NCBI RefSeq assembly: GCF_036365525.1
Contig: NW_027140807.1
Span: forward strand, 1,054,001 to 1,118,000
DNA: 64,000 bases
Direction of reading: 5' to 3'
Source of the DNA: Heterodontus francisci
Lineage: Eukaryota
The position numbers and the translations under genes were made by a program. The notes under the pieces are model-generated. The model was not told where the DNA came from. It did no database searches and was given only the letters and a program-made list of their open reading frames with translations. Shown here piece after piece: positions 9,865 through 58,091 of this stretch; the first letter of the stretch is position 1; every line of letters begins with the position of its first letter.

Positions 9865-10011
9865 GTCAATCCGTCGTGGTGTATATAGGGGTTGGAGCTG
9901 ACACTGAGACTGACACTGTTCACAGCAGAGTGGACCCGAGACTGAGGAGCAAGCAGCTGGAACTGAACCGACAACATCTCCCACCCAGTGACACCTCCAT
10001 TGGAGACTCTG
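9865..10011 (+). promoter_or_regulatory. Putative promoter (CAAT 9867, TATATA 9882-9887) and non-coding exon 1 of D8C gene A
   Basis: TATA-like box followed about 125 bp later by a strong donor G/GTAAGC at 10012; both are conserved in the paralogue (57962, 58092). Confidence 0.55.
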
Positions 10012-10458
10012 GTAAGCAGTCGGGTGTGGGAGGACTGTTAGAAAAAGCAAAGGAGTTTGTCACTTGCTAGGTGTTGACCCAAGGACTGTGTGTCCTGCTT
10101 CTCCTGAAACAACACCATCTCCATGAATAACCTTTGTCAGAAATTCAAAGAGGTTCGTTACAGGGATGCAGGAGACAGACCTGGAGGAGAGAGTCAGGAA
10201 CACATGTGGTTTATTCATAAAAGTTTTGGAGAGTGGAAAGGGTGAAGGATTGGAGTCAAGTTCCTGATGTTTAACAAGAACATGTAGCTGAACTCTCCTC
10301 TGTCTCTAAGAGCCCCAGTGAGAGAGCGATAATTAGATGGAGCTCACTCTCTGAACTCCTCGGCAACTCCCTATTTTATATTCCCTCCAATTTCCCTACT
10401 CGGTAATCTCTCTCAAATGTTTGTCTTGTGTTTCCCTTTCCAGAATCTCACCAGTAAG

Positions 10459-10492
10459 ATGTGGACTCTGCTGATCATTCTGGGTTACCTGA
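10459..10492 (+). CDS. Gene A signal-peptide exon (MWTLLIILGYL)
   Basis: Acceptor ccctttcCAG at 10441-10443, ATG in AAGATGT context, phase-1 donor GTGAGT. Splicing gives MWTLLIILGYLNSALT-DPC, a typical cleavable signal. Confidence 0.85.
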
Positions 10493-13400
10493 GTGAGTAA
10501 CTTTCATTCTCGACAAAGTTCACCCCCAGTACAACTGGAACAAGCTGTGCTTATTCACGCCATTAAATAGAATAATCTCCCAAATCTGATTGAAGAAATG
10601 TCTGACACGGCAGGGAAGGAGATGATTGGAGGTCTGACTGTTAGTTTAAAAGAGCAGACGGAGGTGGAGAGGCAGAAAGGTTTAGGAGGCCAGACATCTT
10701 GAAGCCACATCAGACAGTGTTGGAGGAAAGGGAGTGGAGGGAAGTTCGACAGGAGGCTTGGGTCAGAGAAACAGAGAGTTGGTGAAGATTACAGAAATGA
10801 GGTGGGAGAGGCCGTAGAGGTCATGAAAGAATTTGAACAGGAAGATGGAAATTGTACATCAAAGGCATTTGCAGCTGTGAACCAATGTGTGTCAGTGAGC
10901 ACAGGGGTGATGTGTGACTTAAACTTTCTGCAAGATAACATACAACAGCAGTGTGTTGGAGGAGACCTGACTTCTGGAAAGTGGAAGCTGGGAGGCTGGC
11001 CAGGAGAGGATTAGAAGATTTGATTCTCTCGAAGGTTGAGGGTTTTAGGTAGAGGATTGGCTGAGGCAAAATCAGTGATGACGGATATTAAGGAGGTTGT
11101 AATTGGCTGCCTTTGTGATGAAGAGGCTTCAGGGAAGGAAGCTGGGCTCAGTCGGAAGCAGGGCCGTGTGCTGATGAGAAATAGGAGAGGGGCAAGATAG
11201 ATTCTCGGGGTACCCTCGAGGTAACAGTGCCGGAGTGGGTAGGGAAGACACTGCAGGAGATTCTCTGGCTGAGACGAGGTTGGGTTGAGTGGAAGTAGGT
11301 GAGAGCAGTTCCACCCAGCTGGACTTGGAACGAGAGGTGTTGGCAGAGGGTAATGTGGTGAATTGTGTCAAAGACTGCCGACAGTTCGAGAAGGATGATC
11401 AGAAACAGTATTCCTGACTTGGCTCTTGCAGCTTCACTGCTGCTCAAACCCTTCACCAGTTATTTGGCACCTCTAGACTTGACTATTCCAAAGACCTCCT
11501 GGCTGATCTCTCACATTCCACCTTCCGTACATTGAGGTCATCCAATATGATACTGCCCAAGTCCCATTCTCCTTTCATCTCCGTGCTCACTGACCGACAC
11601 TGGCTCCCGGTTCAGCAAGGCCTGGATTTCAATATTCTCACAATCGTTTTTAGATCCTTCCATCACCTCGCCGTTCCCTACTGCTGAAATCATCTCCAGC
11701 CCCACAACCCTCAGAGATCTCTGCGCTACTGTAATTCAGGCCTCTTGAGTATTCCCGATTTGAATCCCTTCCACCATTGGCAGCTGTGCCTTCACCTGCC
11801 GAGGCTTAACGCTATGGAATTCTATCCCTCAACTTCTCCGTCTCTCCACCTCTCTTTCATCCTTTCAGAGACTCCTTAAAACCTCCTCTTTGACATTGCA
11901 TTTGGCCACCTGCCCTACCAGCTGCTTCTGTGGATCAGTGTCAGTTCGGGATGGTAACACACCGATGAAGTGCCTCGGGGCATTTTATTCCATCAAAGGC
12001 ACGACATAAATGCATATTGTTGTTGGTTTTGGGACTAAACGTTCCCTCTCCAGGACCCACCATTCACATTGGGTCGCTTGTTCTCCACCTGGCAGTTCTC
12101 GCTCCTCCTCCACTTTACATCTTTCCGACTGGGACGAAGTGAAGCTGAGATATTTACTGCTTTCTGTTCCCTGAGAGCTGGTGGTTAATCTAGAATAGGG
12201 AGGACTGTCTGTGAGCAGTGAGTTAGAGGGGGAGGCTGAGCTGGGAGACAGATGGAAACCCAGTTTAGAGAAGGAGGAAATTTTCCAGCTTTAATCTGGG
12301 GGGTTTTGACCAGGGCGGAGGTTGTAACTGAGATTATTGGTATTTTGGGATGGTGAAAGGCGCTGTGTAACATTAACTGTACTTTATATTAACATTAAAC
12401 ATCTTTGTGTCACTCAATCACAGACTCTGCACTCACTGACCCGTGTGTAAATCATACAGTCCTGGACCAGCCCTGGAGGAGCATCGATTGTACAGGGACT
12501 GAGTGCTCCGGTCAGGTGAAGTGTGATCGGTATCTTGTTCAAGGATGGTACAGATTTAACAGGTAATGTAAAGGAACAAATTCTGGGTAAATCAGTTAAT
12601 GAGGGAGGATTAAGGGATTTCCCCCAGTTTCTGGTACTCTCTGCTGGTACCAGTCTCTCTAAAAATTAATATTTACCATCAGTTCAAGGACTGACTCTGT
12701 GATTGTTGTTTCAGTTCTGGTGGATGGAAGATTCCGGACACTGTTGTCCCAGATAGCCACTGCTCCACAAAGCGTCCAGGCTGGTTACAGGGTAATTTCA
12801 GCCTTTATAATATCAGATTTACATTCACTGTCCAGCACTGTTCACATGGGTTACATTCTTCAATATTTATAAACTCTCATTTCAGGTTCCCATCCCAGTG
12901 TGGGACAGGGGGAAGTAACACGGACAGTTTGTTTCAACAGGGATGGAAATCGCTGCCACAGGACCCAGAAAATAAAGATCAAAAACTGCAGCAGTTATTT
13001 TGTTTATGCGCTGAAGCCTCCACCTGTCTGTAACGCTGCTTATTGCACAGGTAGATTGCTGTTTGTATATGGTGCAGATGGGTGATTCTGGGATGTCCCG
13101 TGTCACCCACAAAAATGAGACAGTTTACGCACTGCCCTCCTTTTTGTGAGGGACACAGTGAATATCGGATCTGTAAAACAGGGTGAACTCTTCACTAAAA
13201 CTCTAGGGAACTGAACCAGATGCTCGCTGTCTGGAGAGAGGGCTGGCATGTCTGGGTATTATTCTGTCAAGAATGCACTTGAGGATTCAGGTTTTCTAGT
13301 GAGTGTCAGACACAGCAGCAGGATCCTGACAGACTCTATGTGAAGGGCAGTCACTCTCGTCTCACCTCTTGAGTTCCACTCTTTTGTCCGTGTTTGAACC

Positions 13401-16400
13401 ACAGCTATGATGAGGTCTGGAGCTGAGTGACCCTGGCGGAGCACAAACTGACCATCACTGAACAGGTAATTGCTGAGCAAGTATCATTTGATAGCACTGT
13501 CGATGACACCTTCCATCATTTGACTGATGATAGAGAGTAGACTGATGGGACGGTAATTGGGTGGGTTGAACTTGCCCTGCTTTGACTTGTCATGCTTTTT
13601 ATGCACAGGACATGCCTGAGCAGATTTACACATTGCAGGGTAGATGCCAGTGTTGTAGCTGTACCAGAATAGCTTGGCTCAGGATGCAACAAGTTCTGGA
13701 GCACAGGTCTTCAGTACTACTTCAGGGATATTGTCAGGGCCCATAGCATTTGCAGTATTCAATGCCTTCAGTCATTTCTTGATATCACCTGGAGTGAATC
13801 GAATTGTCATCTGTGATGTTGGGGACTTCAGGAGCAGGCCGAGGTGGATCATCTACTCGGCACTTCTGGCTGAAGATGGTTGCAAATGCTTGAGTCTTAT
13901 CTTTCGCACTAATGTGCTGGGCTCCCTGATCTTTGAGGATGGGGATATTTCTGGGGCCTCCTCCTCCAGTTAGTTGTTTAATTATCTACTGCCCTTTATG
14001 ACTGGATGTGGCAGGACTGCAGAGCTCAGATCTGATCCGTTGGTTATGGGATCGCTTAGCTCTGTCTATCACATGCTGCTTCTGCTGTTTGGCACGCAGA
14101 TTGTCCTGGGTTGTAGTTTCACCAGGCTGACACCTCATTTTGAGGTATGCCTTGTGCTGCACTTTACATGCCCTCCTGCACTTTTCATTGAACCATGTTT
14201 GGTCTCCTGGCTTGATGGTCATGATAGAGTGGGGAATATACCGGACCATGAGGTTACAGATTGTGGTTGAGTACAATTCTGCTGCTGCTGTTGTTCCCAC
14301 AGCACCTCATGGATGCCCATTGTTGCATTGCTAGATTTGTTTGAATCTATCCCATTTAGCATGGTGATAGTGCCAGACAACACGATGGATGGTATCCTCA
14401 ATGTAAAGGCGGGACTTCGTCTCCACAAGGACTGTGCGGTGGTCACTCCTACCAATACTGTCATGGATATGTGGCAGGCAGATTGGTGAGGATGAAGTCA
14501 AGTATATTTTCACCTCTTGTTGATTCTGTCATCATCTGCCACAGTCGCAGACTAGCAGCTATGTCCTTTAGGACTCAGCCAGCTCGGTCAGGAGTGGGCG
14601 GCAGTGATTGAGGGGAGTGGGATGTAGTGAATGTGGGGAGTGGGATGTCGTGACTGAGGGGAGGGGGATGCAGTGACTGAGGGGAGTGGGATGCAGTGAC
14701 TGAGGGGAGTGGGATGCTGTAATTGAGGGAAGTGGGATGTAGTGACTGATGAGTGAGATGTGGTAACTGATGGGAGTAGGATGTAGAGATGCGGGGAGTG
14801 AGGTGCAGTGCTTGAAGGGAATGGTACGGTATGATTCGGTGGACCTTGTGTGGTAACATAGAGAAGTGGGATGCAGTTATTGAGGGGAGTAGGATGCCGT
14901 GACTGAGTGGAGTGGGATACACAGACTGAGGGGAGTGGGATGCAGTGACTGAGGGGAGCTGGATGCAGTGACTGAGGGGAGTGTGATATAGTGACTGAGG
15001 GGAGTGGAATACAGTGACTGTGGGGAGTGTGATGCAGTGACTGAGGGGAGTGTGATACAGTGACAGTGGGGAATGGGATACAGTGACTGAGGGGAGTGTG
15101 ATACAGTGACTGAGGGGAGTGTGATACAGTGACTGAGGGGAGTGGGATACAGTGACTGAGGGGAGTGGAATACAGTGACTGTGGGGAGTGTGATACAGTG
15201 ACTGAGGGGAGTGTGATACAGTAACTGAGGGGAGTGTGATCCAGTGACTGTGGGGAGTGGGATACAGTGACTGAGGGGAGTGGAATACATTGACTGAGGG
15301 GAGTGGAATACAGTGACTGTGGGGAGTAGGATACAGTGACTGAGGGGAGTGTGATACAGTGACTGAGGAGAGTGTGATACAGTAACTGAGGGGAGTGGAA
15401 TACAGTGACTGAGGGGAGTGGAATACAGTGACTGTGGGGAGTGGGATGCAGTGACTGAGGGGAGTGTGATCCCTTACATTTATCTTCACATCCTCCTCGC
15501 TTTCACTTGTCACTTGAACTTTTCCCAGTTCTGATGTCAGGTCACATATTAACATTAAACATCTTTCTGTCACTCAGTCACAGACTCTGCACTCACTGAC
15601 CCGTGTGTAAATCACACAGTCCTGGACCAGCCCTGGAGAAGCAGCGATTGTGATGTCACTGGGTGCTCCGGTCAGGAGAAGTGTGATGATAATCTTCACT
15701 TCGGATGGTACCGATTTAAAAGGTAATGTAAAGGAACAATTTCAGGGTAATCTAGTCAATATGGGCAGAGTAAGGGACTTCCCCCAGTTTCTGGTCCTAT
15801 TTGCTGGTACCAGTCTCTCTAACAGTTAATATTTACCATCAGTTCAGGGACTGACTCGATGATTGTTATTTCAGTTCTGGTGGATGGAAGATTCCGGAGA
15901 CTGCTGTCCCACATCATCGCTGCTCCACAAATGTTACAGGCTGGTTACAAGGTAATTTCAGCCTTTATAATATCAGATTTACATTCACTGTCCAGCACTG
16001 TTCACATGGGTTACTGTCTTCAATATTTATAAACTCTCATTTCAGGTTCCCATCCCAGCGTGGGACAGGGGGAAGTAACACGGACAGTTTGTTTATACTG
16101 GGGTAGAAAACACTGCGACAAGGTCCATGAGATAAAGATCAAAAACTGCAGCAGTTACTTCGTTTATGAGTTGAAGTCGTTGTTTCGTTGTGCTGCGTAT
16201 TGTACAGGTACTTTGATGCTTCTATATCATCCAGAGGGTGAAACTGGGATGTCCCGTGTCACCCACAGAAATGAGACAGTTTACTCGCTCCCCTCCTTAT
16301 TGTCAGGGACACAGTGAATAAAGGATCTGAAACACAAAGTGTACTTCACTGAAACTCTAGGGAACTGAACCAGACTCTGCTGTCCCTGTCTCTCAGGCAC

Positions 16401-19400
16401 TCTGATCCCTGCAGTGTTCATGGCTCACGTCAGGTCCCCACTGCAGTGCTGGGCACCTCACACTCCCTCTCCAGGAAACAATGTTCATGAAGAGTCGGAT
16501 TGGATGGTCGAGTGTTTGATAAAGATGAAAATCTGACACTGTCTGGACTCGAGTACTTAATACATGAGCTCTTTGGGTTTTCTCCACTCTGCCCTCTTCC
16601 TTTATTACAGATCCAGAGACTGTCGCAACTGAGGAACCCGAGGAACAAACAACTCGAGTATCCACGAGGGGATCATCGTCTACCCCTGCGGTGTCTGGAA
16701 CATCAGGTACCCCCCTTGTGGGTCCATTCGAAACAGGTTCCACACCCAATGTTACATCATAGAAGATCAGTCCTGGAGATCATCCAGTCTCTTACTGAGG
16801 GAAGTGGGATGGAGTGATTGAGGGAATTGGGATGAGTGACTGAGGGGAGTGGAATGTAGTGACTGAGGGGAGTGGATGCGGTGACTGAGGGGAGTGGGAT
16901 GGGGTGACTGAGGGGAGTGGGCTGGGGTGACTGAGGGGAGTGGGATGTAGTGACTGAGTGGAGTGGGATGTAGTTACTGAGGGGAGTGGGATGTGAACAA
17001 AGAACAAAGAACAAAGAAAATTACAGCACAGGAACAGGCTCTTCGGCCCTCCAAGCCTACGCCGATCCAGATCCTCTATCTAAACCTGTCGCCTATTTTC
17101 TAAGGGTCTGCATCTCTTTATTTCCTGCCCATTCATGTATCTGTCTAGATACATCTTAAAAGACGCTATCGTGCCCGCGTCTACCACCTCCACTGGCAAT
17201 GCATTCCATGCACCCACCACCCTCTGCGTAAATAACTTTCCACGCATATCTCCCCTAACCTTTTCCCCTTTCTCTTTGAACTCGTGTCCCCTTGTAATTG
17301 AATCCCCCACTCTGGGAAAAAGCTTCTAGCTATCCACCCTGTCTATACCTCTCATGATTTTGTGCACCTCAATCATGTCCCCCCTCAAGCTCCTTCTTTC
17401 TAATGAAAATAATCCTAATCTACTCAACCTCTCTTCATAGCTAGCGCCCTCCAAACCAGGCAACATCCTGGTGAACATCCTCTGCACCCTCTCCAAATCA
17501 TCCACATCCTTTTGGTAATGTGGCGACCAGAACTGCACGCAGTATTCCAAATGTGGCCGAACCAAAGTCCTATACAACTGTAACATGACCTGCCAACTCT
17601 TGTACTCAATGACCCGTCCGATGAACGAAAGCATGCCGTATGCCTTCTTGACCACTCTATTGACCTGCGTTGCCACCTTCAGGGAACAATGGACCTGAAC
17701 ACCCAAATCTCTCTGTACATCAATTTTCCCCAGGACTTTTCCATTTACTGTATAGTTCACTCTTGAATTGGATCTTCCAAAATGCATCACCTCGCATTTG
17801 CCCTGATTGAACTCCATCTGCCATTTCTCTGCCCAACTCTCCAATCTATCTATATTCTGCTGCATTCTCTGACAGTCCCCTTCACTATCTGCTACTCCAC
17901 CAATCTTAGTGTCGTCTGCAAACTTGCTAATCAGACCACCTATACTTTCCTCCAAATCATTTATGTATATCACAAACAACAGTGGTCCCAGCACAGATCC
18001 CTGTGGAACACCACTGGTCACACGTCTCCATTTTGAGAAACTCCCTTCCACTGCTACTCTCTGTCTCCTGTTGCCCAGCCAGTTCTTTATCCATCTAGCT
18101 AGTACACCTTGGACCCCATGCGCCTTCACTTTCTCCATCAGCCTACCATGGGGAACCTTATCAAACGCCTTACTGAAGTCCATGTTTCCGACATCTACAG
18201 CCCTTCCCTCATCAATCAACTTTGTCACTTCCTCAAAGAATTCTATTAAGTTGGTAAGACATGACCTTCCCTGCACAAAACCATGTTGCCTATCACTGAT
18301 AAGCCCATTTTCTTCCAGATGGGGATAGATCCTATCCCTCAGTATCTTCTCCAGCAGCTTCCCTACCACTGACGTCAGGCTCACCGGTCTATAATTACCT
18401 GGATTATCCCTGCTACCCTTCTTAAACAAGGGGGCAACATTAGCAATTCTCCAGTCCTCCGGGACCTCACCCGTGTTTAAGGATGTAGCAAAGATATCTG
18501 TTAAGGCCCCAACTATTTCCTCTCTCGCTTCCCACAGTAACCTGGGATAGATCCCATCCGGACCTGGGGACTTGTCCACGTTAATGCCTTTTAGAATACC
18601 CAACACTTCCTCCCTCCTTAGGCCGACTTGACCTAGAGTAATCAAACATCTGTCCCTAACCTCAACATCCGTCATGTCCCTCTCCTCGGTGAATACCAAT
18701 GCAAAGTATTCATTTGGAATCTCACCCATTTTCTCTGACTCCACACATAACTTTCCTCCTTTGTCCTTGAGTGGGCCAATCCTTTCTCTAGTTACCCTCT
18801 TGCTCCTTATATATGAATAAAAGGCTTTGGGATTTTCCTTAACCCTGTTTGCCAATAATATTTCATGACCCCTTTTAACACTCTTAATTCCTCGTTTCAG
18901 ATTGTGCCTACAATCCCGATATTCTTTCCAAGCTTCGTCATTCTTCAGCCGCCTAGACCTTATGTATGCTTCCTTTTTCCTCTTAGCTGGTCTCACAATT
19001 TCACCTGTCATCCATGGTTCCCTAATCTTGCCATTTCTATCCCTCATTTTCACAGGAACATGTCTCTCCTGCACACTAATCAACCTCTCTTTAAAAGCCT
19101 CCCACATATCACATGTGGATTTACCTTCAAACAGCTGCTCCCAATCTGCATTCCCCAGCTCCTGCCGAATTTTGGTATAGTTGTCCTTCCCCCAATTTAG
19201 CACTCTTCCTTTAGGACCACTCTTGTCTTTGTCCATGAGTATTCTAAACCTTACGGAATTGAGATCACTATTCCCAGAGTAGTCCCCTACTGAAACGTCA
19301 ACCACCTGGCCCGGCCCATTCCCCAACACCAGGTCCAGTATGGCCCCTTCCCGAGTTGGACTATTTACATACTGCTCTAGAAAACCCTCCTGGATGCTCC

Positions 19401-31400: not shown

Positions 31401-34400
31401 GGTGAGTGGGATATAGTGACTGATGGGATATGGATGCAGTGATTGAGGGCAGTGGGAGATAGTCACTGAGCAGAGTGGGTCGTAGTGACTGAGGGCAGTG
31501 GGTTATAGTGACTGAGGGCAGTGGTATGTATTCACTGTGCAGAGTGGGATGTGGTAACTGCGGAGTGTGGGATGCAGTGACTGAGGTGAGTGGGATACAG
31601 TGACTGAGGTGAGTGTGATACAGTGACTGAGGGCAGTGGGATACAGTGACTGAGAGGAGTTGATACAGTGACTGAGATATTGTGATGCAGTGACTGAGGT
31701 GAGTGTGATGCAGTGACTGCTGGGAGTGTGATACAGTGACTGAGGGGTGTGTGACGCAGTAATGTCGTGAACAGGATGGAAGATAATGGTTTTATAAAGA
31801 TTGTTATCTGTCATTCTCCTGACACGAGCACCATCCTGTTGACCTGATGTGTTTTTCTCCATGTCTCACTTTGCAATGTCTCCCTCCCTTTAATACAGAA
31901 CCCGTGACTTCCCAAACGCAGGAATCCGAGGAACAATCGACTAGAGAATCTACTGAGGTTTCATCCTCCACCCCAGCGGGCTCTGGAAGCTCAGGTACCT
32001 GCCTTGTGGTGTTATCATCGCAGAATCATGGAATCAGAGACTGGTTACAACACAGAAAGAGGCCATTGAGCCCATCGTCACCGTGACAGCTGTATGCCTG
32101 TGCAACGCACCTACTCCCAGTCCTGCCAATTCCCCATCTCCCAGCAGATTGATTCTCCGATGACAATTTTCCAATTCCCTTTTGAAGGCCTCAATTGAAC
32201 CTGCCTCCAGCACACTCTCAGGCAGTGCATTTCAGATCCTAACCACTCGCTGTGTGAAAAGATTTTCCTGTCTCTGTTGTGACTTACATCACTCACCTAA
32301 AGCCGGTGCCCTCTAGTTCTGGATCCTCCCACCAATGGGACTGAGGGGAGTGGGACATAGTTACTGAGGGGAGAGTGATGCAGTGACTGAGGGGAGAAGG
32401 TTGCACTGACCGAGGGGAGTGGGATATAGTGACTGAGGGCAGTGGGACATAGTGACTGAGGGTAGTGTGATACAATGACAGAGGAAGTGTGATACAGTGA
32501 CTGAGAGAGTGTGATACAGTGACTGAGAGAGTGTGACACAGTGACAGAGGGAAGTGGGATACAGTGACTGAATGTGTGGGATACAGTGACTGAGGGGATT
32601 GTGATACTGTGACAGCGGGGAGTGTGATACAGTGACTGAGAGAGTGTGATACGGTGACTGGGGTAGAGTGATACAGTGACTCCGGGAGTGTGATACACTG
32701 TCTGAGGAGAGTGGGATGCAGTGACTGAGGGGAGTGTGATGCAGTGTCTGAGGGGTGTAGGATAAAGTGAACTGAAGGGAGTGTGATCCAGTGACTGGAG
32801 GAGTGTGATACAGTGACTGAGGGGAGTGTGATACAGTGTCTGAGGGTAGTATGATACAGTCACTGAGGGGAGTGCGATGCAGCGACTGAGGGTAGTGTGA
32901 TACAGTGTCTGAGGGGGATGTGATACAGTGACAGAGGGTAGAGTGATACAATGACAGAGGAAGAGTGATACAGTGACAGAGGGGAGTGTGATACAGTGGG
33001 TGAGGGGAGTGTGATGCAGTGACTAAGGGGAGCATTATACAGTGACTGAGGGGAGTGTGATACAGTGACTCCGGGAGTGTGATACAGTGATTGAGGGGAG
33101 TGCGATAAAGTTACGGAGGGGAGTGTTATACACTGACTGAGGGGATTGGGATACAGTGACTGAAGGGAGTGTGATACAGTGACTGGAGGAGTGTGACACA
33201 GTGACTGAGGGGAGTGTGATACAGTGTCTGAGGGTAGTATGATACAGTCACTGAGGGGAGTGCGATGCAGCGACTGAGGGTAGTGTGATACAGTGTCTGA
33301 GGGGGATGTGATACAGTGACAGAGGGTAGAGTGATACAATGACAGAGGAAGAGTGATACAGTGACAGAGGGGAGTGTGATACAGTGGGTGAGGGGAGTGT
33401 GATGCAGTGACTGAGGGGAGCATTATACAGTGACTGAGGGGAGTGTGATACAGTGACTCCGGGAGTGTGATACAGTGATTGAGGTGAGTACAATAAAGTT
33501 ACGGAGGGGAGTGTTATACACTGACTGAGGGGATTGGGATACAGTGACTGAAGGGAGTGTGATCCAGTGACTGGAGGAGTGTGATACAGTGACTGAGGGG
33601 AGTGTGATACTGTGTCTGAGGGTAGGATGATACAGTCACTGAGGGGAGTGCGATGCAGCGACTGAGGGTAGTGAGATGCAGTGTCTGAGGGGGATGTGAT
33701 ACAGTGACAGAGGGTAGAGTGATACAATGACAGAGGAAGAGTGATACAGTGACAGAGGGGAGTGTGATACAGTGGGTGAGGGGAGTGTGATGCAGTGACT
33801 AAGGGGAGCATTATACAGTGACTGAGGGGAGTGTGATACAGTGACTCCGGGAGTGTGATACAGTGATTGAGGGGAGTGCGATAAAGTTACGGAGTGGAGT
33901 GTTATACACTAACTGAGGGGATTGGGATACAGTGCCGGAAGGGAGTGTGATACAGTGACTGAGGGCTGTGGGATGCAGTGACTGAGGGGAGTAGGATACA
34001 GACACTGAGGGGAGTGGGATGCAGCGACTGAGGGTAGTGTGATACAGTGACTGAGGGGAGTGTGATACAGTCACTGAGGAGAGGGGAATGCAGCGACTGA
34101 GGGGAGTGGGGTACAGTGACTGAAGGGAGTGTGATACAGTGACTGAGGGGTGTGGGATGCAGTGACTGAGGGGAGTAGGAAACAGTCACTGAGGGGAGTG
34201 GGATGCAGCCACTGAGGGTAGTGTGTTACAGTGACTGAGGGGAGTATGATACAGTCACTGAGGAGAGTGGAATGCAGCGACTGAGGGGAGTGTGATAGAG
34301 TGACTGAGGGGAGTGTGATACAGTGACTAAGGGGAGCATTATACAGTGGCTGAGAGAGTGTGATACGGTGACTGGGGGAGAGTGATACAGTGACTGTGGG

Positions 34401-37400
34401 GAGTGTGATACACTGTCTGAGGAGAGTGGGATGCAGTGACTGAGGGGAGTGTGATGCAGTGTCTGAGTGGTGTAGGATACAGTGAACTGAAGGGAGTGTG
34501 ATACAGTGACTGGGGGAGTGTGATACAGTGACTGAGGGGAGTGTGATACAGTGTCTGAGGGTAGTATGATACAGTCACTGAGGGGAGTGCGATGCAGCGA
34601 CTGAGGGTAGTGTGATACAGTGTCTGAGGGGGATGTGATACAGTGACAGAGGGGAGAGTGATACAATGACAGAGGAAGAGTGATACAGTGACAGAGGGGA
34701 GTGTGATACAATGGGTGAGTGGAGTGTGATACAGTGACTAAGGGGAGCATTATACAGTGACTGAGGGGAGTGTGATACAGTGACTCAGGGAGTGTGATAC
34801 AGTGATTGAGTGGAGTGCGATAAAGTTACGGAGGGTAGTGTTATACACTGTCTGAGGGGATTGGGATACAGTGACCGAAGGGAGTGTGATTCAGAGACTG
34901 AGGGGTGTGGGATGCAGTGACTGAGGGTAGTAGGATACAGTCACTGAGGGGAGTGGGATGCAGCGACTGAGGGTAGTGTGATGCAGTGACTGAGGGGAGA
35001 ATTATACAGTGACTGAGGGGAGTGTGATACAGTGACTCAGGGAGTGTGATACAGTGATTGAGTGGAGTGCGATAAAGTTACGGAGGGTAGTGTTATACAC
35101 TGTCTGAGGGGATTGGGATACAGTGACTGAAGGGAGTGTGATCCAGTGACTGGAGGAGTGTGATACAGTGACTGAGGGGAGTGTGATACAGTGTCTGAGG
35201 GTAGTATGATACAGTCACTGAGGGGAGTGCGATGCAGTGACTGAGGGTAGTGTGATGCAGTGTCTGAGGGGAGTATGATACAGTCACTGAGGAGAGGGGA
35301 ATGCAGTGACTGAGGGGAGTGGGATACAGTGACTGAAGGGAGTGTGATACAGTGACTGAGGGGTGTGGGATGCAGTGACTGAGGGGAGTAGGATACAGTC
35401 ACTGCGGGGAGTGGGATCAGCGACTGAGCATAGTGTGATGCAGTGACTGAGGGGAGTATGATCCAGTCACTGAGGAGAGTGGAATTCAGTGGCTGAGGGG
35501 AGTGTGATAGAGTGACTGAGGGGAGTGGGATACAGTGACTGAGGTGAGCGTGATACAGTGAAAGAGGGAAGTGGGATACAGTGACTGAGAGAGTGTGATA
35601 CAGTGACAGAGGGAAATGGGATACAGTGACTGAATGTGTGGGATACAGTGACTGAGGGGTGTGTGATACTGCGACAGCGGGGAGTGCGATACAGTGACTG
35701 ATAGAGTGTGATACAGTGACTGGGGGAGAGTGATACAGTGACTGAGGGGAGTGTGATACAGCGACTGAGAGAGTGTGATACAGTGACAGAGGGAAGTGGG
35801 ATACAGTGACTGAATGTGTGGGATACAGTGACTGATAGAGTGTGATACAGTGACTGGGGGAGTGTGATACTGCGACAGCGGGGAGTGCGATACAGTGACT
35901 GATAGAGTGTGATACAGTGACTGGGGGAGTGTGGTACATTGACTGAGGGGAGTGTGATACTCTGTCTGAGTAGAGTGGGATGCAGTGACTGAAGCGAATA
36001 TAATGCAGTGACTGAGTGGAGTGTGATACATTGAATGAGGGGAGTGTGAGACTCTGTCTGAGGGGAGTGGGATACAGTGAACTGAAGGGAGTGTGATACT
36101 GTGACTGGGGGAGTGTGATACAGTGACTGAGGAGAGTGTGATACACTGTCTGAGGGGAGTGGAGTGCAGTGACTGAAGGGAATATAATGCAGTGACTGAG
36201 GGGAGTGTGATACAGTGCCTGAGGGGCGTGTGTTGCAGTCGCTGAGGGGAGTGTGATACAGCGACTGAGGGGAGTGTGATACAGTGACTGAGGGGAATGT
36301 GATAAAGTGACTGAGGTGAGTGTAATGCAGTGACTGAGGGGAGTGTGATAGAGACTGAGGGCAGCATGATGCTCAAACTCAGGAATCCGAGGAACAATTG
36401 ACTAGAGAATCTACTGAGGTTTCATCCACTACCCGAGCGGGCTCTGGAAGCTAAGGTATCTGCTTTGTGGGGTTATCATCGCAGAATCATGGAATCAAAG
36501 ACTGGTTACGGCACAGAAAGTTTCTGTTCAGCCCATCTTCACTGAGCCAGCTCTCTGGCAGTGCAACTCACCTACTCCCACTCCTGCCATTTTCCTGTCG
36601 CCCTGCAGATTTTTTCTGCCATGACAATTATCCAATTCCCTTTTGAAAGCCTCAATTAAACCTGCCTCCAGCACACTCTCATGCAGTGCATTTCAGATCC
36701 TAACCACTCGCTGTGTGAAAAGGTTTCCCTGCCTCTGTTGTGACTTTTACCACTCACCTAAATGCGTTGCTCTCTAGTTCTGGATCCTCCCACCAAGAGG
36801 AACAGTTTTTCCCTGACTACTCTGTCCAGTTCCCTCTTGATTATGAACATCTTGCTCAAATCTCGTCTTAATCGTCTCTTCTCCACGGAGAACAGCCCCA
36901 GCTTCTCCGATCTATTCATGTCACTGACGTCCCTCATCCCGGGAACCATTCTGGTAAATCTTCTCTGCACCCTCTCGAATACCTTAACATCCTTCCTAAG
37001 TATTGACCGCTCTCTCGACCTGTCTTGCCACCTTCAATGATTTGTGCACATGTCCCCCCAGGTCCCTCTGCCCCTGCACCTCCTTTAGAATTGTAGCCTT
37101 TATTTTATATTGCCTCTCGTTCGTCCGACCAAAATGAATCACTTCACAATTCTCTGTGATAAATTTCATTTGCCAGTGTCTGCCCATCCCACCAGCCTGT
37201 CTATGACCTCCTGACGTCTATCACTGTCCTCCTCACAGTTCACAATACAACCAGGTTTTGTGTCATCTGCAGAATTTGAAAGTGTGCCCTGTACGCCCCA
37301 GTCTATGTCATTAATATATACATCAGGAAAAACAGTGGTCTGAGCAATATTAGAGAGCAAAGCACAGATGCACAGAGAATTAGCAGGGACAGATAACACT

Positions 37401-39907
37401 GGAGTCGATAAGAGTATCGTATTAGACGGGGGCAGTGGAAGAGGAAAGGAGATAAGCTGTAAATTCAGTTTAATGTGTGTGTATATGGAGGCACGGAGAG
37501 TGGTAAATAAGGTTGTTGAGCTTCAGGCGCAGATAGCCACGTGGAAATATGATGTTGTGGCAATAACAGGGTCCTGGCTCTAAGTGGGGCAGGACTGGGT
37601 AGTGAATATTCCTGACTACAAGGTGTTCAGGAAAGAGAGGGGAGGAAGGAAAGGAGGAGGGGTATCAGTATTGATTAAGGGGAACATTGCAGTGCTGTTT
37701 TCTTTTCTCTCTCTTGTTCTCACTCATTCCAGATCTCCCTTACTCTTTTCTGTCTCACTCCTGTCGCCTTCCCTCCTTTTCTCTCATTCCTGCTCTCTGT
37801 TGTTCTCTGACTCCACTTTCCCCCTGTCGTTTCGCTGATCACTTTGATAATCTCCTGAATTTTCTCTGTTAGTTTTTTTTCCTTGTCGGAGTCGTAACTG
37901 ATTCTGCAGCCGATGATGTCTGGTGTCTCCCCTCGGTAAAGGCTGGTATACATTGATTCAGTGTGTCGAGGGAGTTAGATTACATACGAGAGGAGGTTCT
38001 GTGTTAAAACACTTCTGTCCACTCATCCAGCGTTCTGAATCCCAGTGAAATTCCTCTTGTCTTTATTTGATCCTCTCAGACTCGGGGATTCCGTCTACTC
38101 CCGAGGAACCTCCCGACTCCCAGCCTGTTTCTGATGATGGTGGGAACATTTCAGATTCTCCACATTTCAGGAATATTAAATCCCTCCTCCTGTCTCAGTC
38201 TGGCACAAATATATCAGGACCGAGGGCCTCCAAACAGCTGTGTGATCGTTCTGTGTAGGGAAACCCATCGTTCTCACTCTCTCTCTCTGCCTTGTCTGTG
38301 CTGTCAGACAAGAGTTGCAGTCGCTTGTGTTCAGTCTGAGTGGAATCATTGGGAAACACAGAAACGTAAACGTTCAGAAATTCCTTCAGAAATATCTTTG
38401 AGCTTCTATCTCACATCCCTCTCTCTCTTACTCTCAGTTTTATCTCTGTCTCTCCTTTATCTGCCTTTCACACGCATATATAAATATATTTCATTTCTGT
38501 AACCGCCTCTCTCCGATGCGGGTCTCAGTTTCTCCAGCTCCCTCTTTCGCCTCACTCTGTCTCCCACTCTCTCTGATGTTCTGTCTCCCTGTCTGTCTCT
38601 CTGACTCTCACTTTCTCTCTCTGTCTCTCTCACAGATGCTCTTTGTCTGTCTCTCTGTCTTTGTCTTTGTCAGAGGGACAGAGAGCATCAGAGAGAGAGA
38701 GAGAGTGAGAGTGAGAGACAGAGACAGAGAAAAGGGCAGTGAGACCGGAGTAAACACGGAATGCAAATGATCTCGGGAGATGGAACAAGAGGCAATGGAG
38801 AAGAGAGTGCAGGATAGAGGATGATAACACAGGGAGGGCAGATTAGAGACAAGACGAGTTGAGATAGAGAGAATAACAGAGACAGATGAACAAACGAGTG
38901 GATGACAAACTGGAGGAAAGAGAGTTTAAATTAGAGAGGCGAGATCATTCGAAATACGTCCCGTGCCCTGTGCTAAACTCTGGGTGTGTTCAACCTGTTG
39001 ATGTTGTGACTGTTGTGTTTAGATACCAAATACAAGAGGATTAATGTGAAGATCACTTCAATGACTGATCTGGATGATGAAACTGCAAAGAGAATCGTTG
39101 TGGAGAGGGTAAGAGACTGCACTGTACTGAGGAGAAACACGGGAGACAACAGATCCTCCCTCTCACTGTCTGTATTCACTGAATGGGAACTCCAGGTCAT
39201 TATTTAAACAGCTCTAATTCCCCTCTGCTTATCTTCTGGTCCCCCAGATCAGGCTTGTGAGGGGTTGAATGGGCTTCCTCCTGAGCCTGTGTGAAAGGCT
39301 CGAGAGCGGGTGAGGGGGCTGAATGGCCTTCTCCTGTTCCTGTGTAAGAACTCGAAAGAGGGGCTCAATGGCCTCCTCCTGTTCCTGTGTAACAGATTCG
39401 AGGGGATGAATGGCCTCCTCGTTGTACGGTAACCTCTCTCTGATCTTCCCTCTCACTCTCCCCATTCTCTCTTTATGTCCTTTCTATCTCTGTCTCTTTC
39501 TCTGCCTCGCTCACCCACTCTGTATTTCTCTTTCTTTGTCTTTCTTTCTGTCTGTGTCTGTCTCTCCCTCACTGCATCTCTGACGACCTCTCGCTCTCAC
39601 GCCATCTGTTTCTCTACCTCTGTCTCAATCCCTGTAGCTCTCCCACCCTCCCTCTCCATCTCTCCCTCTATCTGAGTATCTTTGCCTCACCCTGTCTCTC
39701 ACTGTCTTGTCCCCACCCTTTCTCCCGATCTCTGTCTGTATCCTCTCTGTCTCTTTCTATTCACTCCTCCCCTTGCAGTAATACTCATCGTTTCTCCTCT
39801 CTGCGATGCAGATGAAGCAGATGTTCCAGGATCAGTGTCCACACACGAAGCTCGAATTGGATCCAGAAGACGTTCAGTGCTCGGCTAGTGCGCCTGTGGA
39901 AGTGTGA
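10459..39907 (+). CDS. Gene A (spliced model): secreted uromodulin/GP2/OIT3-like protein with 2 D8C(D10C) domains, S/T/E-rich stalk and short C-terminal module, no ZP domain
   Basis: Joins 10459-10492, 12424-12562, 12715-12791, 12886-13050, 15584-15722, 15875-15951, 16046-16207, 16611-16706, (20345-20434), 22705-22800, 25132-25227, 27882-27977, 30404-30499, 31899-31994, 38080-38139, 39023-39108 and 39812-39907. All junctions are GT-AG with compatible phases and no internal stops; 536 aa, or 566 aa with the optional exon. Confidence 0.8.
10570..12025. mobile_element. L2 LINE relics (RT fragment on - strand about 10570-11420; 3' end on + strand about 11560-12025)
   Basis: LIILLELSAVFDTIHHITLCQHLS..LGGTALTYFHS is a degenerate L2 LDLSAAFDTVDH motif; CACTGGCTCCCGGTT (HWLP) and a TTG tail are also present. 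Confidence 0.75.
12424..13050 (+). CDS. Gene A D8C domain 1 (three exons: 12424-12562, 12715-12791, 12886-13050)
   Basis: DPCVNHTVLDQPWRS..KCD....GWYRF.SSGGWKIP..CST..GWLQGSHPSVGQGEVTRTVCF..C..IKIKNCSSYFVYALKPPPVCNAAYCT matches the UMOD/GP2 D8C signature. Confidence 0.93.
13325..14590 (-). mobile_element. CR1-group LINE fragment (endonuclease end to RT start), disrupted
   Basis: HDSIGRSDHRTVLVE, KPGDQTWFNEKCRRAC, NYRPISLLS and GHSAPDLI motifs. Confidence 0.85.
14590..15470 (+). repeat. G-rich 23-bp satellite array
   Basis: Unit cagtgactgaggggagtg(t/g)gat(a/g). Confidence 0.95.
15584..16207 (+). CDS. Gene A D8C domain 2 (three exons: 15584-15722, 15875-15951, 16046-16207)
   Basis: DSALTDPCVNHTVLDQPWRSSDCDVTGCSGQEKCDDNLHFGWYRFKSSGGWKIPETAVPHHRCSTNVTGWLQGSHPSVGQGEVTRTVCLYWGRKHCDKVHEIKIKNCSSYFVYELKSLFRCAAYCT; splice sites intact. 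Confidence 0.93.
16611..16706 (+). CDS. Gene A stalk exon 1 (96 bp, phase 1-1)
   Basis: tttattacAG / DPETVATEEPEEQTTRVSTRGSSSTPAVSGTS / GTACCC. Confidence 0.8.
16790..16995 (+). repeat. 23-bp satellite (left part of an array split by CR1)
   Basis: Same unit as 14590-15470; continues at 19513-20150. Confidence 0.9.
16996..19513 (-). mobile_element. Young 5'-truncated CR1 LINE with near-intact ORF2 (endonuclease end plus RT)
   Basis: ORF 17326-19578: GDFNFPNIDW, NYRPVSLTS, DFSKAFDKVPH, GVPQGSVLGP, FADD. A single nonsense codon precedes an in-frame continuation to 17080; 3' tail (TTCTTTG)n. Confidence 0.97.
19513..20150 (+). repeat. 23-bp satellite (right part)
   Basis: Same unit. Confidence 0.9.
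20339..20434 (+). CDS. Gene A stalk exon 2 (ancestral acceptor mutated AG>AC; in-frame cryptic acceptor at 20343-20344)
   Basis: Homologous to 16611-16706: (DP)ETSTTSRTKEQTTPQSIEKAPSNPIDTFTS / GTATCA. Confidence 0.5.
20660..21365 (+). mobile_element. CR1 LINE 3' fragment
   Basis: LGVLVHSSLKAAAQVD..LYKTLVWPQLEY..LEQRRLRGDLIEVYKIMRG..WNTL plus the 3' UTR gggccgaagggcctgtttcc. Confidence 0.9.
21825..22570 (+). repeat. 23-bp satellite array (preceded by a CT-rich tract at about 21430-21825)
   Basis: Same unit, degenerate at the 5' end. Confidence 0.9.
22705..22800 (+). CDS. Gene A stalk exon 3 (96 bp)
   Basis: EPMTSQTQESEEQSTGESTEVSSSIPVGSGTP; AG/GT intact. Confidence 0.8.
22830..24545. mobile_element. 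CR1 with inverted halves (3' part on - strand 22830-23680; endonuclease part on + strand 23690-24545)
   Basis: Minus: LEKMGLFSLEKRRLREDLIEVFKI. Plus: MCVYMDARRVVNKVVELQA..VVAITESW and DHxIM motifs. Repeated at 25255-26995 and 36485-37695. Confidence 0.85.
25132..25227 (+). CDS. Gene A stalk exon 4 (96 bp)
   Basis: EPVTYQTQESEEQSTAESTEGPSSIPAGSGSS; AG/GT intact. Confidence 0.8.
25255..26995. mobile_element. Duplicated inverted CR1 (copy of 22830-24545)
   Basis: Colinear with 22830-24545. Confidence 0.85.
27882..27977 (+). CDS. Gene A stalk exon 5 (96 bp)
   Basis: EPVTSQTQESEEQSTRESTEVSSSTPAGSGSS; AG/GT intact. Confidence 0.8.
30404..30499 (+). CDS. Gene A stalk exon 6 (96 bp)
   Basis: Same peptide as exon 5; AG/GT intact. 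Confidence 0.8.
31899..31994 (+). CDS. Gene A stalk exon 7 (96 bp)
   Basis: Same peptide as exon 5; AG/GT intact. Confidence 0.8.
36374..36455 (+). pseudogene. Dead stalk exon copy
   Basis: 5' end and acceptor replaced by satellite; last codon TCA>TAA (QTQESEEQLTRESTEVSSTTRAGSGS*). Confidence 0.8.
36485..37695. mobile_element. Third long copy of the inverted CR1
   Basis: Colinear with 25255-26470. Confidence 0.85.
38080..38139 (+). CDS. Gene A acidic/Pro linker exon (60 bp, phase 1-1)
   Basis: tcctctcAG / DSGIPSTPEEPPDSQPVSDD / GTGGGA; composition matches the stalk, donor is weaker. Confidence 0.6.
39023..39108 (+). CDS. Gene A penultimate coding exon (phase 1-0)
   Basis: tgtgtttAG / DTKYKRINVKITSMTDLDDETAKRIVVER / GTAAGA (strong donor). 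Confidence 0.7.
39250..39425 (+). repeat. Short tandem repeat (about 42 bp x4) resembling a CR1 3' UTR end
   Basis: ctcgaggggctgaatggcctcctcctgttcctgtgtaa-like units. Confidence 0.6.
39812..39907 (+). CDS. Gene A terminal coding exon
   Basis: Polypyrimidine tract and gcAG, then phase-0 MKQMFQDQCPHTKLELDPEDVQCSASAPVEV*. No canonical AATAAA was seen within 1.8 kb downstream. Confidence 0.62.
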   Translation: MKQMFQDQCPHTKLELDPEDVQCSASAPVEV

Positions 39908-57944: not shown

Positions 57945-58091
57945 GTCAATCCGTCGTGGTGTATATAGGGGTTGGAGCTGTCACTGAGACTGATACTGTT
58001 CACAGCAGAGTGGACCCGAGACTGAGGAGCAAGCAGCTGGAACTGAACCGACAACATCTCCCACCCAGCGACATCTACTTTGGAGACTCTG
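57945..58091 (+). promoter_or_regulatory. Putative promoter and non-coding exon 1 of gene B
   Basis: TATATA 57962-57967; donor GTAAGC at 58092. Confidence 0.55.

What the first reader, a model, noticed from the sequence alone, without database searches (positions are those of the whole stretch)
9865..39907. ZP-less secreted tandem D8C/D10C 'decoy-module' protein on a variable mucin-like stalk, forming a tandem gene family
Seen: a complete phase-compatible gene that the ORF track does not capture (signal peptide, D8C, D8C, 6-7 S/T/E repeats, about 60-aa tail, stop) and a second intact-looking paralogue 48 kb downstream. Established: in uromodulin and GP2 this domain is the branch/decoy module that engages the bacterial adhesin FimH and sits on a ZP polymerisation module with a GPI anchor. 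I found no ZP exons, TM segment or GPI signal here. Inference: a soluble, multigene mucosal or humoral recognition family that displays the decoy domain on a glycosylated stalk instead of a ZP filament.
Basis: partly seen in the sequence, partly recalled or inferred. Interest (0 to 1): 0.85.

Follow-up and report, generated by a model that had tools for sequence, protein, structure and literature searches.

The report
Shark ZP-less D10C stalk gene
This is a real, intact-looking shark gene for a secreted protein with two uromodulin/GP2-type heads, an acidic sugar-bearing stalk and a small conserved tail but no filament-forming ZP module; it belongs to a large shark-and-ray gene family that is predicted in public databases but that nobody has studied.

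Summary
On the + strand, 17 exons with canonical AG/GT sites and matching phases give a 568-codon reading frame. It has a leader (ATG at 10459, not 9865), two D10C-type domains of three exons each, seven Ser/Thr/Glu stalk exons plus one broken copy, three tail exons, and a stop at 39905-39907.

RefSeq models from the horn shark Heterodontus francisci have the same architecture and the same C-terminus (XP_067884563.1). An 8.4-kb duplicate that is 90% identical starts a second copy 48 kb downstream.

Pfam scans of 329 ORFs around and after the gene found no ZP domain. No exon encodes a hydrophobic anchor. RNA contigs show the leader spliced to the first D10C exon, but they probably come from the downstream copy.

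The family is present across sharks and rays. It is named inconsistently in databases, and I found no paper on it. The decoy reading is only partly supported. The GP2 N65 sequon is conserved, but the beta-hairpin half of the decoy module, the UMOD N275 sequon and one canonical disulfide are missing.

Function is inferred, not shown. The scan already followed up this family on the adjacent DNA (s1-872196).

The parts
10459..10492 (+). Leader exon. It encodes MWTLLIILGYL plus 1 base, ends in phase 1 and has the donor A|GTGAGT. A strong acceptor (cctttccag) lies 16 nt upstream of the ATG.
   Evidence: It is 100% identical in the downstream copy at 58556-58589. It has the same N-terminus as XP_067884563.1. 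An RNA contig joins 10491/2 to 12417/8.
12424..12562 (+). D10C-1 exon a. It carries 4 Cys and the sequon NHT, which aligns with GP2 N65. The canonical acceptor at 12415-17 reads CAA; the in-frame AG at 12422-23 is used in this model.
12715..12791 (+). D10C-1 exon b (SGGWKIPDTVVPDSHCSTKRPGWLQ), with 1 Cys.
12886..13050 (+). D10C-1 exon c, with 5 Cys; it ends in phase 1.
   Evidence: Pfam D8C_UMOD, E 4.9e-08, 33.5 bits. It matches UMOD and GP2 chains in the PDB at about E 1e-7.
15578..15722 (+). D10C-2 exon a, with 4 Cys and the NHT sequon.
   Evidence: D10C-1 and D10C-2 are 86% identical at the DNA level.
15875..15951 (+). D10C-2 exon b, with 1 Cys and an NVT sequon.
16046..16207 (+). D10C-2 exon c, with 5 Cys. 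If its donor is not used, the frame reads through to a stop that overlaps an AATAAA at 16317.
   Evidence: Pfam D8C_UMOD, E 1.2e-05, 25.8 bits.
16611..16706 (+). Stalk exon 1 (96 nt, phase 1-1): PETVATEEPEEQTTRVSTRGSSSTPAVSGTS.
20345..20434 (+). Stalk exon 2, a diverged 90-nt variant whose acceptor is shifted by 6 nt.
   Evidence: It is used in RefSeq model XP_067883189.1.
22705..22800 (+). Stalk exon 3 (96 nt).
25132..25227 (+). Stalk exon 4 (96 nt).
27882..27977 (+). Stalk exon 5 (96 nt).
30404..30499 (+). Stalk exon 6 (96 nt). A second donor 36 nt downstream would add GTCHVGSSSQNH, as in XP_067884563.1.
31899..31994 (+). Stalk exon 7 (96 nt).
36371..36451 (+). Broken eighth stalk cassette. 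The acceptor has been replaced by minisatellite, and an in-frame TAA sits just before the donor.
38080..38139 (+). Tail exon 1, an acidic, proline-rich linker (SGIPSTPEEPPDSQPVSDD).
   Evidence: Matches XP_067884563.1 over its 21-residue alignment; the last aligned residue (G) reads into the intron, and the spliced codon gives D here.
39023..39108 (+). Tail exon 2 (TKYKRINVKITSMTDLDDETAKRIVVER); it ends in phase 0.
   Evidence: The motif is conserved across the family.
39812..39907 (+). Tail exon 3 (MKQMFQDQCPHTKLELDPEDVQCSASAPVEV) with the TGA stop at 39905-39907.
28342..36361 (.). The largest of the 23-bp minisatellite arrays (GGAGTGGGATACAGTGACTGAGG) that precede the stalk exons from 20.3 kb onward (a short array follows s16). 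Each repeated cassette is made of an array, a stalk exon and antisense LINE debris.
58556..61149 (+). Downstream paralogue: leader 58556-58589 and D10C-1 exons 60518/24-60662, 60815-60891 and 60985-61149. Its acceptor is the intact CAG.

Best explanation
This is one copy of an elasmobranch family of secreted, ZP-less D10C glycoproteins.

**What is shown**
- A 17-exon, 568-codon open frame.
- It encodes a cleavable-looking leader and two uromodulin/GP2-type D10C domains. Four of the five canonical disulfides are kept, and a lineage-specific cysteine pair is added.
- It has a roughly 220-residue acidic Ser/Thr-rich stalk, built by serial duplication of a cassette made of a 96-nt phase 1-1 exon, a minisatellite and LINE debris.
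- It ends in a roughly 59-residue C-terminal tail that is conserved from sharks to rays.
- There is no ZP module, transmembrane segment or GPI signal.

**What is inferred about how it works**
- The protein is released as a soluble, heavily glycosylated molecule.
- The D10C heads sit at the end of an extended stalk. Each probably carries an N-glycan at the position of GP2 N65.
- The heads either offer that glycan to microbial lectins, acting as a decoy or agglutinin, or bind ligands through their variable loops.
- The tail has a nearly invariant cysteine 4-10 residues from the C-terminus. In many members this cysteine is unpaired. It may link chains covalently and so provide the multivalency that the ZP filament gives in UMOD and GP2.
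For: - **Gene model.** Splice sites, phases and exon translations are. Exon-by-exon tblastn of RefSeq XP_067884563.1 (472 aa) and XP_067883189.1 (about 96% identical to this locus) is.
- **D10C identity.** Pfam PF23283. PDB sequence matches to GP2 and UMOD. The AlphaFold model of the paralogue has pLDDT above 90 in both heads, and Foldseek matches GP2 7p6r at TM 0.85, rmsd 1.2 A.
- **Glycan site.** DPCVNHT aligns with GP2 61-DPCQNYTLL-69. N65 carries oligomannose, and N65A impairs FimH binding (PMC8930769).
- **No ZP or anchor.**
- **Expression of the family.** A spliced RNA contig joins the leader to D10C exon a, and a second contig comes from a paralogue with a different leader.
- **Selection on the frame.** There are no stops or indels in 415 nt of D10C-1 exons compared with the downstream copy, while the flanking non-coding DNA carries gaps. 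The three youngest stalk exons are 99-100% identical, while their downstream flanks are 89-92% identical.
- **Family and tail.** More than 90 D8C-only relatives were found in sharks and rays. The tail profile hits 32 of the 255 proteins fetched; those whose species was looked up are sharks or rays, and most hits lie within a few residues of the C-terminus. The tail has pLDDT 86-93 and a helix at 431-449 in the model.
Against: - The spliced RNA contig differs from this copy at three positions in 68 nt, exactly where the downstream copy differs. Contig depth over D10C-1 exons b and c is near zero at 93% likeness or better. Transcription of this particular copy is therefore not shown.
- The canonical acceptor of D10C-1 exon a is CAA in this copy.
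- There is no beta-hairpin to shield the N65-type glycan, so it may be processed to complex type and lose lectin-decoy value.
- The stalk is poor in proline (2-3 of 31 residues) compared with classical mucin PTS repeats.
- The first AATAAA after the stop is 1.8 kb downstream.
- A dimer prediction for the tail gave no answer.
- Tissue, glycosylation and ligands are all unknown.
- Whole-protein analyses used the RefSeq paralogue, not the joined exons of this window.
Confidence: 0.6

Rival explanations
1. The family is a direct-binding recognition family rather than a glycan decoy. The D10C heads bind targets such as microbes or self ligands through four fast-changing surface loops. The tandem array diversifies like an innate immune receptor family.
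For: - Replacements between this copy and the downstream copy cluster in four stretches: 12510-12558, 12770-12778, 12939-12971 and 13008-13040.
- pN is 0.065, about equal to intron divergence of 5-7%, while the cysteines and framework stay fixed.
- The same stretches differ between D10C-1 and D10C-2.
- The family is multigene and sits among TCR V segments.
Against: - pN/pS is about 0.5 overall, from only 32 differences, so there is no significant excess of replacements.
- No ligand is known for any D10C domain apart from its glycan and the Bence-Jones epitope.
- Linkage to V segments may be coincidental.
Confidence: 0.2
2. This particular copy is a decaying, non-functional duplicate inside an otherwise active family.
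For: - The canonical acceptor is lost at 12415-17 (CAA versus CAG in the downstream copy).
- The acceptor of the 20.3-kb stalk exon is shifted, and one stalk cassette is broken.
- The RNA contigs that were laid fit the downstream copy better.
- RefSeq has only a partial model for the nearly identical locus.
Against: - All 17 exons are open, and every junction has AG/GT in a compatible phase.
- Both shifted acceptors are in frame.
- There are no indels in the exons, while the neighbouring introns carry them.
- The youngest stalk exons are kept identical.
Confidence: 0.15
3. The protein is an acidic secretory phosphoprotein or granule-matrix component. The Ser-x-Glu-rich stalk is phosphorylated by a Fam20C-type kinase rather than O-glycosylated. 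The protein then serves in calcium binding or in packaging of secretions, as GP2 does in zymogen granules.
For: - Each canonical stalk exon has two S-x-E/D motifs, 16% acidic residues and few prolines.
- GP2 is a granule protein (established knowledge).
Against: - S-x-E motifs are common in any Ser/Glu-rich sequence.
- The stalk repeat units differ completely between species; Mustelus, for example, has basic GKSTTRE repeats. That argues for a spacer role, not a specific acidic function.
Confidence: 0.05
4. The gene is longer than modelled. Its transcripts continue to ZP, EGF, TM or GPI exons, so it is an ordinary UMOD/GP2/omcin-type filament protein.
For: Teleost omcins and some multi-D8C proteins from a coral and a loach do carry ZP modules (PMC11415648).
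Against: - No ZP, EGF or anchor signal appears in any ORF between the stop and the next copy on either strand.
- The next gene unit begins at about 55 kb.
- The RefSeq paralogue and 32 relatives end at the same tail.
Confidence: 0.03

Closest known systems
Human GP2 and uromodulin decoy module (beta-hairpin + D10C; PDB 7P6R, 7PFP, 7Q3N)
   Same: The D10C fold and sequence match: about 40% identity, Foldseek TM 0.85 on the paralogue model. Eight of the ten cysteines are conserved, as is the N-glycan sequon at GP2 N65.
   Different: - There is no beta-hairpin, no EGF domains, no ZP module and no GPI anchor.
- The C3-C6 disulfide is lost, and a new cysteine pair sits in a 4-residue insert.
- The UMOD N275 sequon is absent.
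- There are two heads in tandem, carried on a Ser/Thr stalk with a new C-terminal tail.
Teleost omcin family (zebrafish omc1-15, PMC11415648)
   Same: It is a lineage-specific tandem expansion of genes with several D10C domains. Gene number varies between species, and a role in resistance to bacteria has been demonstrated for omc5.
   Different: - Omcins keep EGF IV, the ZP module and a predicted GPI anchor.
- They were described as teleost-specific.
- The shark family has none of these parts and has its own stalk and tail.
OIT3/LZP and other 'uromodulin-like' annotations
   Same: They share Pfam PF23283. RefSeq names several shark members 'OIT3-like', 'uromodulin-like' or 'GP2-like'.
   Different: OIT3 is a ZP protein. 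The names are automatic transfers from the D8C match only.
Secreted mucins with exon-encoded Ser/Thr repeats
   Same: Both have repeated, symmetric-phase exons that encode S/T-rich spacers, and the copy number changes by unequal duplication. Some relatives are auto-named 'mucin-5AC-like' or 'integumentary mucin-like'.
   Different: - The stalk has low proline and high glutamate.
- There are no VWD, CK or SEA domains.
- The repeats are separate exons in 1.5-3.7-kb cassettes, not one large PTS exon.
Secretory tailpiece of IgM/IgA (analogy only)
   Same: Both are short C-terminal extensions with a near-terminal cysteine. In immunoglobulins this cysteine makes inter-chain disulfides and multimers.
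   Different: There is no sequence similarity. The shark tail is about 59 residues with a predicted helix. Oligomerisation is untested.

Membership tests
UMOD/GP2/OIT3 D8C-D10C domain (Pfam PF23283) | Profile match above Pfam's gathering score | tested here: met
   Exon c of D10C-1 scores 33.5 bits against a cut-off of 27. Exon c of D10C-2 alone scores 25.8, just under the cut-off. The downstream copy scores 31.8. The full-length paralogue scores 85.7 bits with two stretches.
UMOD/GP2/OIT3 D8C-D10C domain (Pfam PF23283) | D10C fold as in the GP2 crystal structure | tested here: met
   The AlphaFold model of the paralogue XP_067884563.1 has pLDDT above 90 in both heads. Foldseek gives 7p6r at E 4e-15, TM(target) 0.85-0.86 and rmsd 1.2 A. 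The window's own joined exons were not folded.
UMOD/GP2/OIT3 D8C-D10C domain (Pfam PF23283) | Ten canonical cysteines forming C1-C8, C2-C9, C3-C6, C4-C10 and C5-C7 (PMC8930769) | tested here: not met
   There are ten Cys per domain, but only eight are homologous. C3 (ETC becomes DTV) and C6 (NCC becomes NRC) are both absent. A new pair lies in the insert C-TGTE-C between C1 and C2 (alignments; disulfide map).
GP2/UMOD 'decoy module' | Bipartite module: a disulfide-stapled beta-hairpin packed on D10C, forming the glycan groove | tested here: not met
   Only about 8 residues lie between the leader and the first D10C cysteine. D10C-2 follows D10C-1 directly. GP2 residues 29-57 have no counterpart.
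GP2/UMOD 'decoy module' | N-glycan sequon at GP2 N65 or UMOD N275 | tested here: met
   The GP2-type site is met: DPCVNHT in both domains aligns with DPCQN65YT. The UMOD-type site is not met: WLQGSHP stands where UMOD has WLN275GTHP.
GP2/UMOD 'decoy module' | High-mannose glycan bound by FimH or another microbial lectin | not testable with these tools
   This needs glycoproteomics and binding assays.
UMOD/GP2/omcin filament proteins | C-terminal ZP module (ZP-N/ZP-C), with or without EGF IV | tested here: not met
   Pfam scans covered 130 + strand ORFs of 45 aa or more (36.4-57.2 kb), 93 minus-strand ORFs of 55 aa or more there, and 106 ORFs of 55 aa or more in 1-14.5 kb (+ strand only to 10.4 kb). 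No ZP or EGF match was found. The paralogue has D8C only.
UMOD/GP2/omcin filament proteins | GPI-anchor signal or transmembrane segment | tested here: not met
   The maximum Kyte-Doolittle mean over 11 residues is 0.85 or less in every exon after the leader. The C-terminus is ...DVQCSASAPVEV. No dedicated GPI predictor was available.
Secreted protein | N-terminal signal peptide | tested here: inconclusive
   MWTLLIILGYL is hydrophobic (KD 2.07) and conserved as M-[WRK]-[TS]-LLLILG-x-L across the family. No SignalP run was possible, and the joined leader-plus-exon sequence was not submitted.
Mucin-like stalk | Tandem Ser/Thr/Pro-rich repeats that are densely O-glycosylated | tested here: inconclusive
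   The exons are 39-48% Ser+Thr, 10-16% acidic and only 6-10% Pro. The region is predicted disordered (pLDDT below 50). Glycosylation cannot be tested here.

The most novel reading that the evidence does not exclude
Sharks and rays have an unrecognised humoral or mucosal defence family. Its members are soluble molecules that become multivalent through a cysteine-bearing tail instead of a ZP filament. Their D10C heads diversify in surface loops, their stalk length is tuned by exon-cassette duplication, and their genes have expanded inside T-cell-receptor V arrays.
Probability: 0.2. Interest if true: 0.8.

Novelty: new variant of a known kind. Interest (0 to 1): 0.52.

Why it matters
In the proteins studied so far (uromodulin, GP2, teleost omcins), D10C domains are displayed on ZP filaments. 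A large, conserved family that shows the same head on a soluble stalk with a new tail would mean the domain works without polymerisation. That gives a clean system for asking what D10C does by itself. It would also add an unstudied component to the secreted defences of cartilaginous fish, and it is a clear example of domain spacing evolving by duplication of an exon-plus-repeat cassette. The family is already in RefSeq under misleading automatic names ('uromodulin-like', 'OIT3-like', 'mucin-5AC-like', 'melanoma-associated antigen E1-like'), so a proper description would also correct the annotation.

Tried and rejected
- **Signal peptide at 9865.** None is there. Only the ATG at 10459 fits, and it is conserved in the paralogue and in RefSeq.
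- **The search for homologous proteins with one exon plus its read-through tail.** No candidates, because of the length window.
- **The same tool restricted to the tail region of P0010.** It returned only four Heterodontus proteins, so it says nothing about wider distribution.
- **ESM Atlas search with the tail.** One unnamed chordate cluster at 0.82, below the level of a lead.
- **PDB sequence searches with the two tail exons.** No match at E up to 10.
- **Complex prediction with two copies of the tail (residues 410-472 of P0010).** No answer: score 0.02, the partner folded poorly, and the alignment was not used. This is not evidence either way.
- **The look-up of sequencing runs.** It returned only three small runs of one sample, with kind guessed. 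They proved to be RNA because the contigs are spliced, but they do not show that this copy is transcribed.
- **Poly(A) signal.** No AATAAA or ATTAAA lies within 1.8 kb of the stop.
- **Joined protein.** The spliced protein of this window was never joined or submitted. Exons were searched one by one by reference, and whole-protein work used the RefSeq paralogue.

Full report
**What is in the sequence**

The window is vertebrate DNA full of LINE debris and minisatellites. On the + strand, stop-free pieces at 12.4-13.1 kb and 15.5-16.3 kb read as two copies of a uromodulin/GP2-type cysteine-rich domain.

Pfam D8C_UMOD (PF23283) matches the third exon of each copy at 33.5 and 25.8 bits. It also matches a further copy at 61 kb at 31.8 bits. 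The first and third exons of domain 1 match GP2 and uromodulin chains in the PDB.

**Gene model**

I read the DNA at every candidate boundary. I then tabulated the exons without joining them.

- The leader runs from 10459 to 10492.
- Each D10C domain is split over three exons.
- There are seven stalk exons. Six are 96 nt long and one diverged copy is 90 nt. All are phase 1-1, with a strong ...tttattacag acceptor and a CAG|GTA donor.
- Three tail exons end in TGA at 39905-39907.
- Every junction is AG/GT and the phases chain without a break. The total is 1707 nt, or 568 codons plus the stop.
- An eighth stalk cassette at 36.37 kb has lost its acceptor to minisatellite and has an in-frame TAA.

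Exons were searched singly by reference.

**Independent support**

A HMMER search of 1.84 billion representative proteins with one exon found 1350 relatives. The closest are RefSeq models from the horn shark Heterodontus francisci.

XP_067884563.1 (472 aa) is a paralogue with exactly this architecture. Mapped exon by exon on the window, it reproduces the D10C, stalk and tail exons; its N-terminus matches the leader. The three tail exons are 100%, 87% and 97% identical, and the C-terminus and stop are the same.

XP_067883189.1 (326 aa) is a partial model about 96% identical to this locus. It uses the 20.3-kb variant stalk exon.

The window therefore most likely comes from H. francisci or a very close relative.

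- There is no ATG or signal peptide at 9865. The coding start is 10459 (MWTLLIILGYL). It is identical in the downstream copy and matches the paralogue's N-terminus.
- A strong acceptor lies 16 nt upstream of the ATG, and a TATATAG lies at 9882-9888.
- In this copy the usual acceptor of D10C-1 exon a is CAA rather than CAG (12415-12417). An AG 6 nt downstream keeps the frame at the cost of two residues near the predicted signal cleavage site.

**RNA evidence**

Only three small runs from one sample were offered. When laid on 10400-14590, they proved to be RNA:

- One contig joins 10491/2 to 12417/8, that is, the leader to D10C exon a.
- Another joins a different leader (MRTLLLILCSL) to the same acceptor.

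The first contig has three mismatches in 68 nt. This copy and the downstream copy differ at exactly three positions in that stretch (12428, 12429, 12455). Exons b and c have almost no contig depth at 93% likeness or better.

The family is therefore transcribed and spliced as modelled. Expression of this particular copy is not shown.

**No ZP and no anchor**

- Pfam scans covered 130 + strand ORFs between the stop and the next copy, 93 minus-strand ORFs there, and 106 ORFs on both strands upstream. They gave reverse transcriptase and one weak V-set match, but no ZP or EGF domain.
- After the leader, no exon has a hydrophobic stretch, and the C-terminus is polar.
- The next gene unit begins at about 55 kb. 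The segment 7092-15470 is repeated at 55160-63569 with 90% identity, and 1-7 kb matches 52-54.6 kb. This is a tandem array with a unit of about 48 kb.

**How close the head is to the GP2/UMOD decoy module**

The AlphaFold model of the paralogue is confident in both heads. It superposes on the GP2 crystal structure at TM 0.85 and 1.2 A.

The GP2 paper defines the decoy module as a disulfide-stapled beta-hairpin packed on D10C. The FimH-binding oligomannose glycan (UMOD N275, GP2 N65) sits in the groove between the two parts, and the five disulfides are C1-C8, C2-C9, C3-C6, C4-C10 and C5-C7 (PMC8930769).

In the shark domains:
- The GP2 N65 sequon is kept (DPCVNHT versus DPCQNYT).
- The N275 sequon is absent (WLQGSHP).
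- C3 and C6 are both missing, and a new cysteine pair sits in a four-residue insert (CTGTEC).
- There is no room for a hairpin.

The head is a D10C variant, not the complete decoy module. Whether its glycan stays oligomannose is open.

**Stalk**

- Each exon is 39-48% Ser+Thr and 10-16% acidic, with few prolines. The region is predicted disordered.
- From the 20.3-kb exon onward each exon follows a 23-bp minisatellite array (a short array follows the 16.6-kb exon instead), and from the 22.7-kb exon onward antisense LINE debris follows. The cassettes are 1.5-3.7 kb apart.
- The three youngest exons are 99-100% identical, while their downstream flanks are 89-92% identical.
- Repeat units differ completely between species. 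The stalk therefore behaves as a spacer whose length changes by cassette duplication.

**Tail**

- The last 59 residues form a conserved block: T-x-Y-K-x-I-x-V-K-[IV]-T-S ... E-x-A-K-x-I ... Q-C ... D-V-Q-C.
- A profile built from the tail finds 32 of the 255 fetched D8C proteins. Those whose species was looked up are sharks or rays, and most hits lie within a few residues of the C-terminus.
- In the model it has pLDDT 86-93 and one helix.
- No Pfam family, PDB sequence or named Atlas cluster matches it.
- The last cysteine is almost invariant. The first is missing in several lineages, which leaves the last one unpaired. That suggests inter-chain disulfides, but this is an inference.
- A dimer prediction gave no answer.

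**Family and literature**

- More than 90 relatives of 260-826 aa carry only PF23283. They come from Heterodontus, Mustelus, Carcharodon, Cetorhinus, Rhincodon, Chiloscyllium, Hemiscyllium, Scyliorhinus, Pristiophorus, Heptranchias, Hypanus, Hemitrygon, Mobula, Amblyraja, Leucoraja, Rhinoraja and Pristis, plus some characiform teleosts.
- Tandem D8C arrays also occur in corals, a sea anemone, a scallop, amphioxus and teleosts, some with ZP modules. Tandem D8C is therefore old.
- What looks specific to elasmobranchs is the combination of head, exon-cassette stalk and tail without ZP.
- Of the 35 papers in the library that mention a D8C or D10C domain, none among the 30 listed concerns these proteins.
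- The nearest studied case is the teleost omcin cluster. It keeps EGF IV, ZP and GPI, and it protects zebrafish against E. coli (PMC11415648).
- Notes from this scan report the same family on other pieces of this genome, interleaved with TCR V segments. A follow-up on the adjacent DNA reached the same reading. I also found V-type fragments on the minus strand at 35-358 and 1404-1574.

**Evolutionary rate**

Between this copy and the downstream copy, the D10C-1 exons are 92.3% identical and the introns 92-95%. pN is 0.065 and pS is 0.13, and there are no indels in the exons. Replacements cluster in four stretches, while the cysteines and framework are fixed. This fits relaxed or diversifying change in the loops, but the numbers are too small to test.

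**Verdict**

- It goes too far in calling the head 'the decoy module' and in assigning a recognition role.
- The protein family is already predicted in RefSeq but has not been characterised. I class it as a new variant of a known kind, of moderate interest.

Noticed in passing
window 35-358 (-) and 1404-1574 (-): These are T-cell-receptor-type V fragments on the opposite strand. One ORF reads ...GLECRVEDESSGYMFWYRQ. Another ends ...DNITYYCA. One of the scanned ORFs gave a weak Pfam V-set match (E 0.0025).
   Followed up: partly
window 16208-16322: If the donor after D10C-2 is not used, the frame runs on for 36 codons to a stop that overlaps an AATAAA at 16317. The downstream copy has an AATAAA at 61256 after its D10C-1. 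This could give a short, heads-only isoform without stalk or tail.
   Followed up: no
window 30500-30535: The sixth stalk cassette alone has a second donor (CATG|GTATCA) 36 nt downstream. It would add GTCHVGSSSQNH, the same extension seen in RefSeq XP_067884563.1.
   Followed up: partly
window 17326-19578 (-): A 750-aa open LINE ORF2 (endonuclease plus reverse transcriptase) lies in the intron between stalk exons 1 and 2. Further RVT_1 ORFs lie on the + strand among the ORFs scanned between 36.4 and 57.2 kb.
   Followed up: partly
window 14591-15470, 16794-16994, 19514-20149, 21825-22566, 24648-24992, 27077-27743, 28342-36361, 62665-64000: A 23-bp G-rich minisatellite (GGAGTGGGATACAGTGACTGAGG) is always in the same orientation. 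It fills the introns and gives them a strong GC skew. On the minus strand it reads as long SPQSL/HTPLSH pseudo-ORFs.
   Followed up: partly
window 3519-3952, 46816-47533; 7090-7443, 54241-55503: Two further tandem-repeat families (36-38 bp CAACAAATTCAACAACAACCTCAACAG... and 37 bp GGAGGAGGTTACAGAGATAGGGAGGGTTGT...) recur at matching places in successive gene units.
   Followed up: no
window 13340-14590: RNA contig depth is very high (thousands) in all three runs over the intron between D10C-1 and D10C-2, with many internal joints. This looks like an abundantly transcribed repeat, not part of the gene.
   Followed up: no
window 12510-12558, 12770-12778, 12939-12971, 13008-13040: Amino-acid replacements between the two copies in the window cluster in four short stretches of D10C-1. 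The same stretches differ between D10C-1 and D10C-2.
   Followed up: partly
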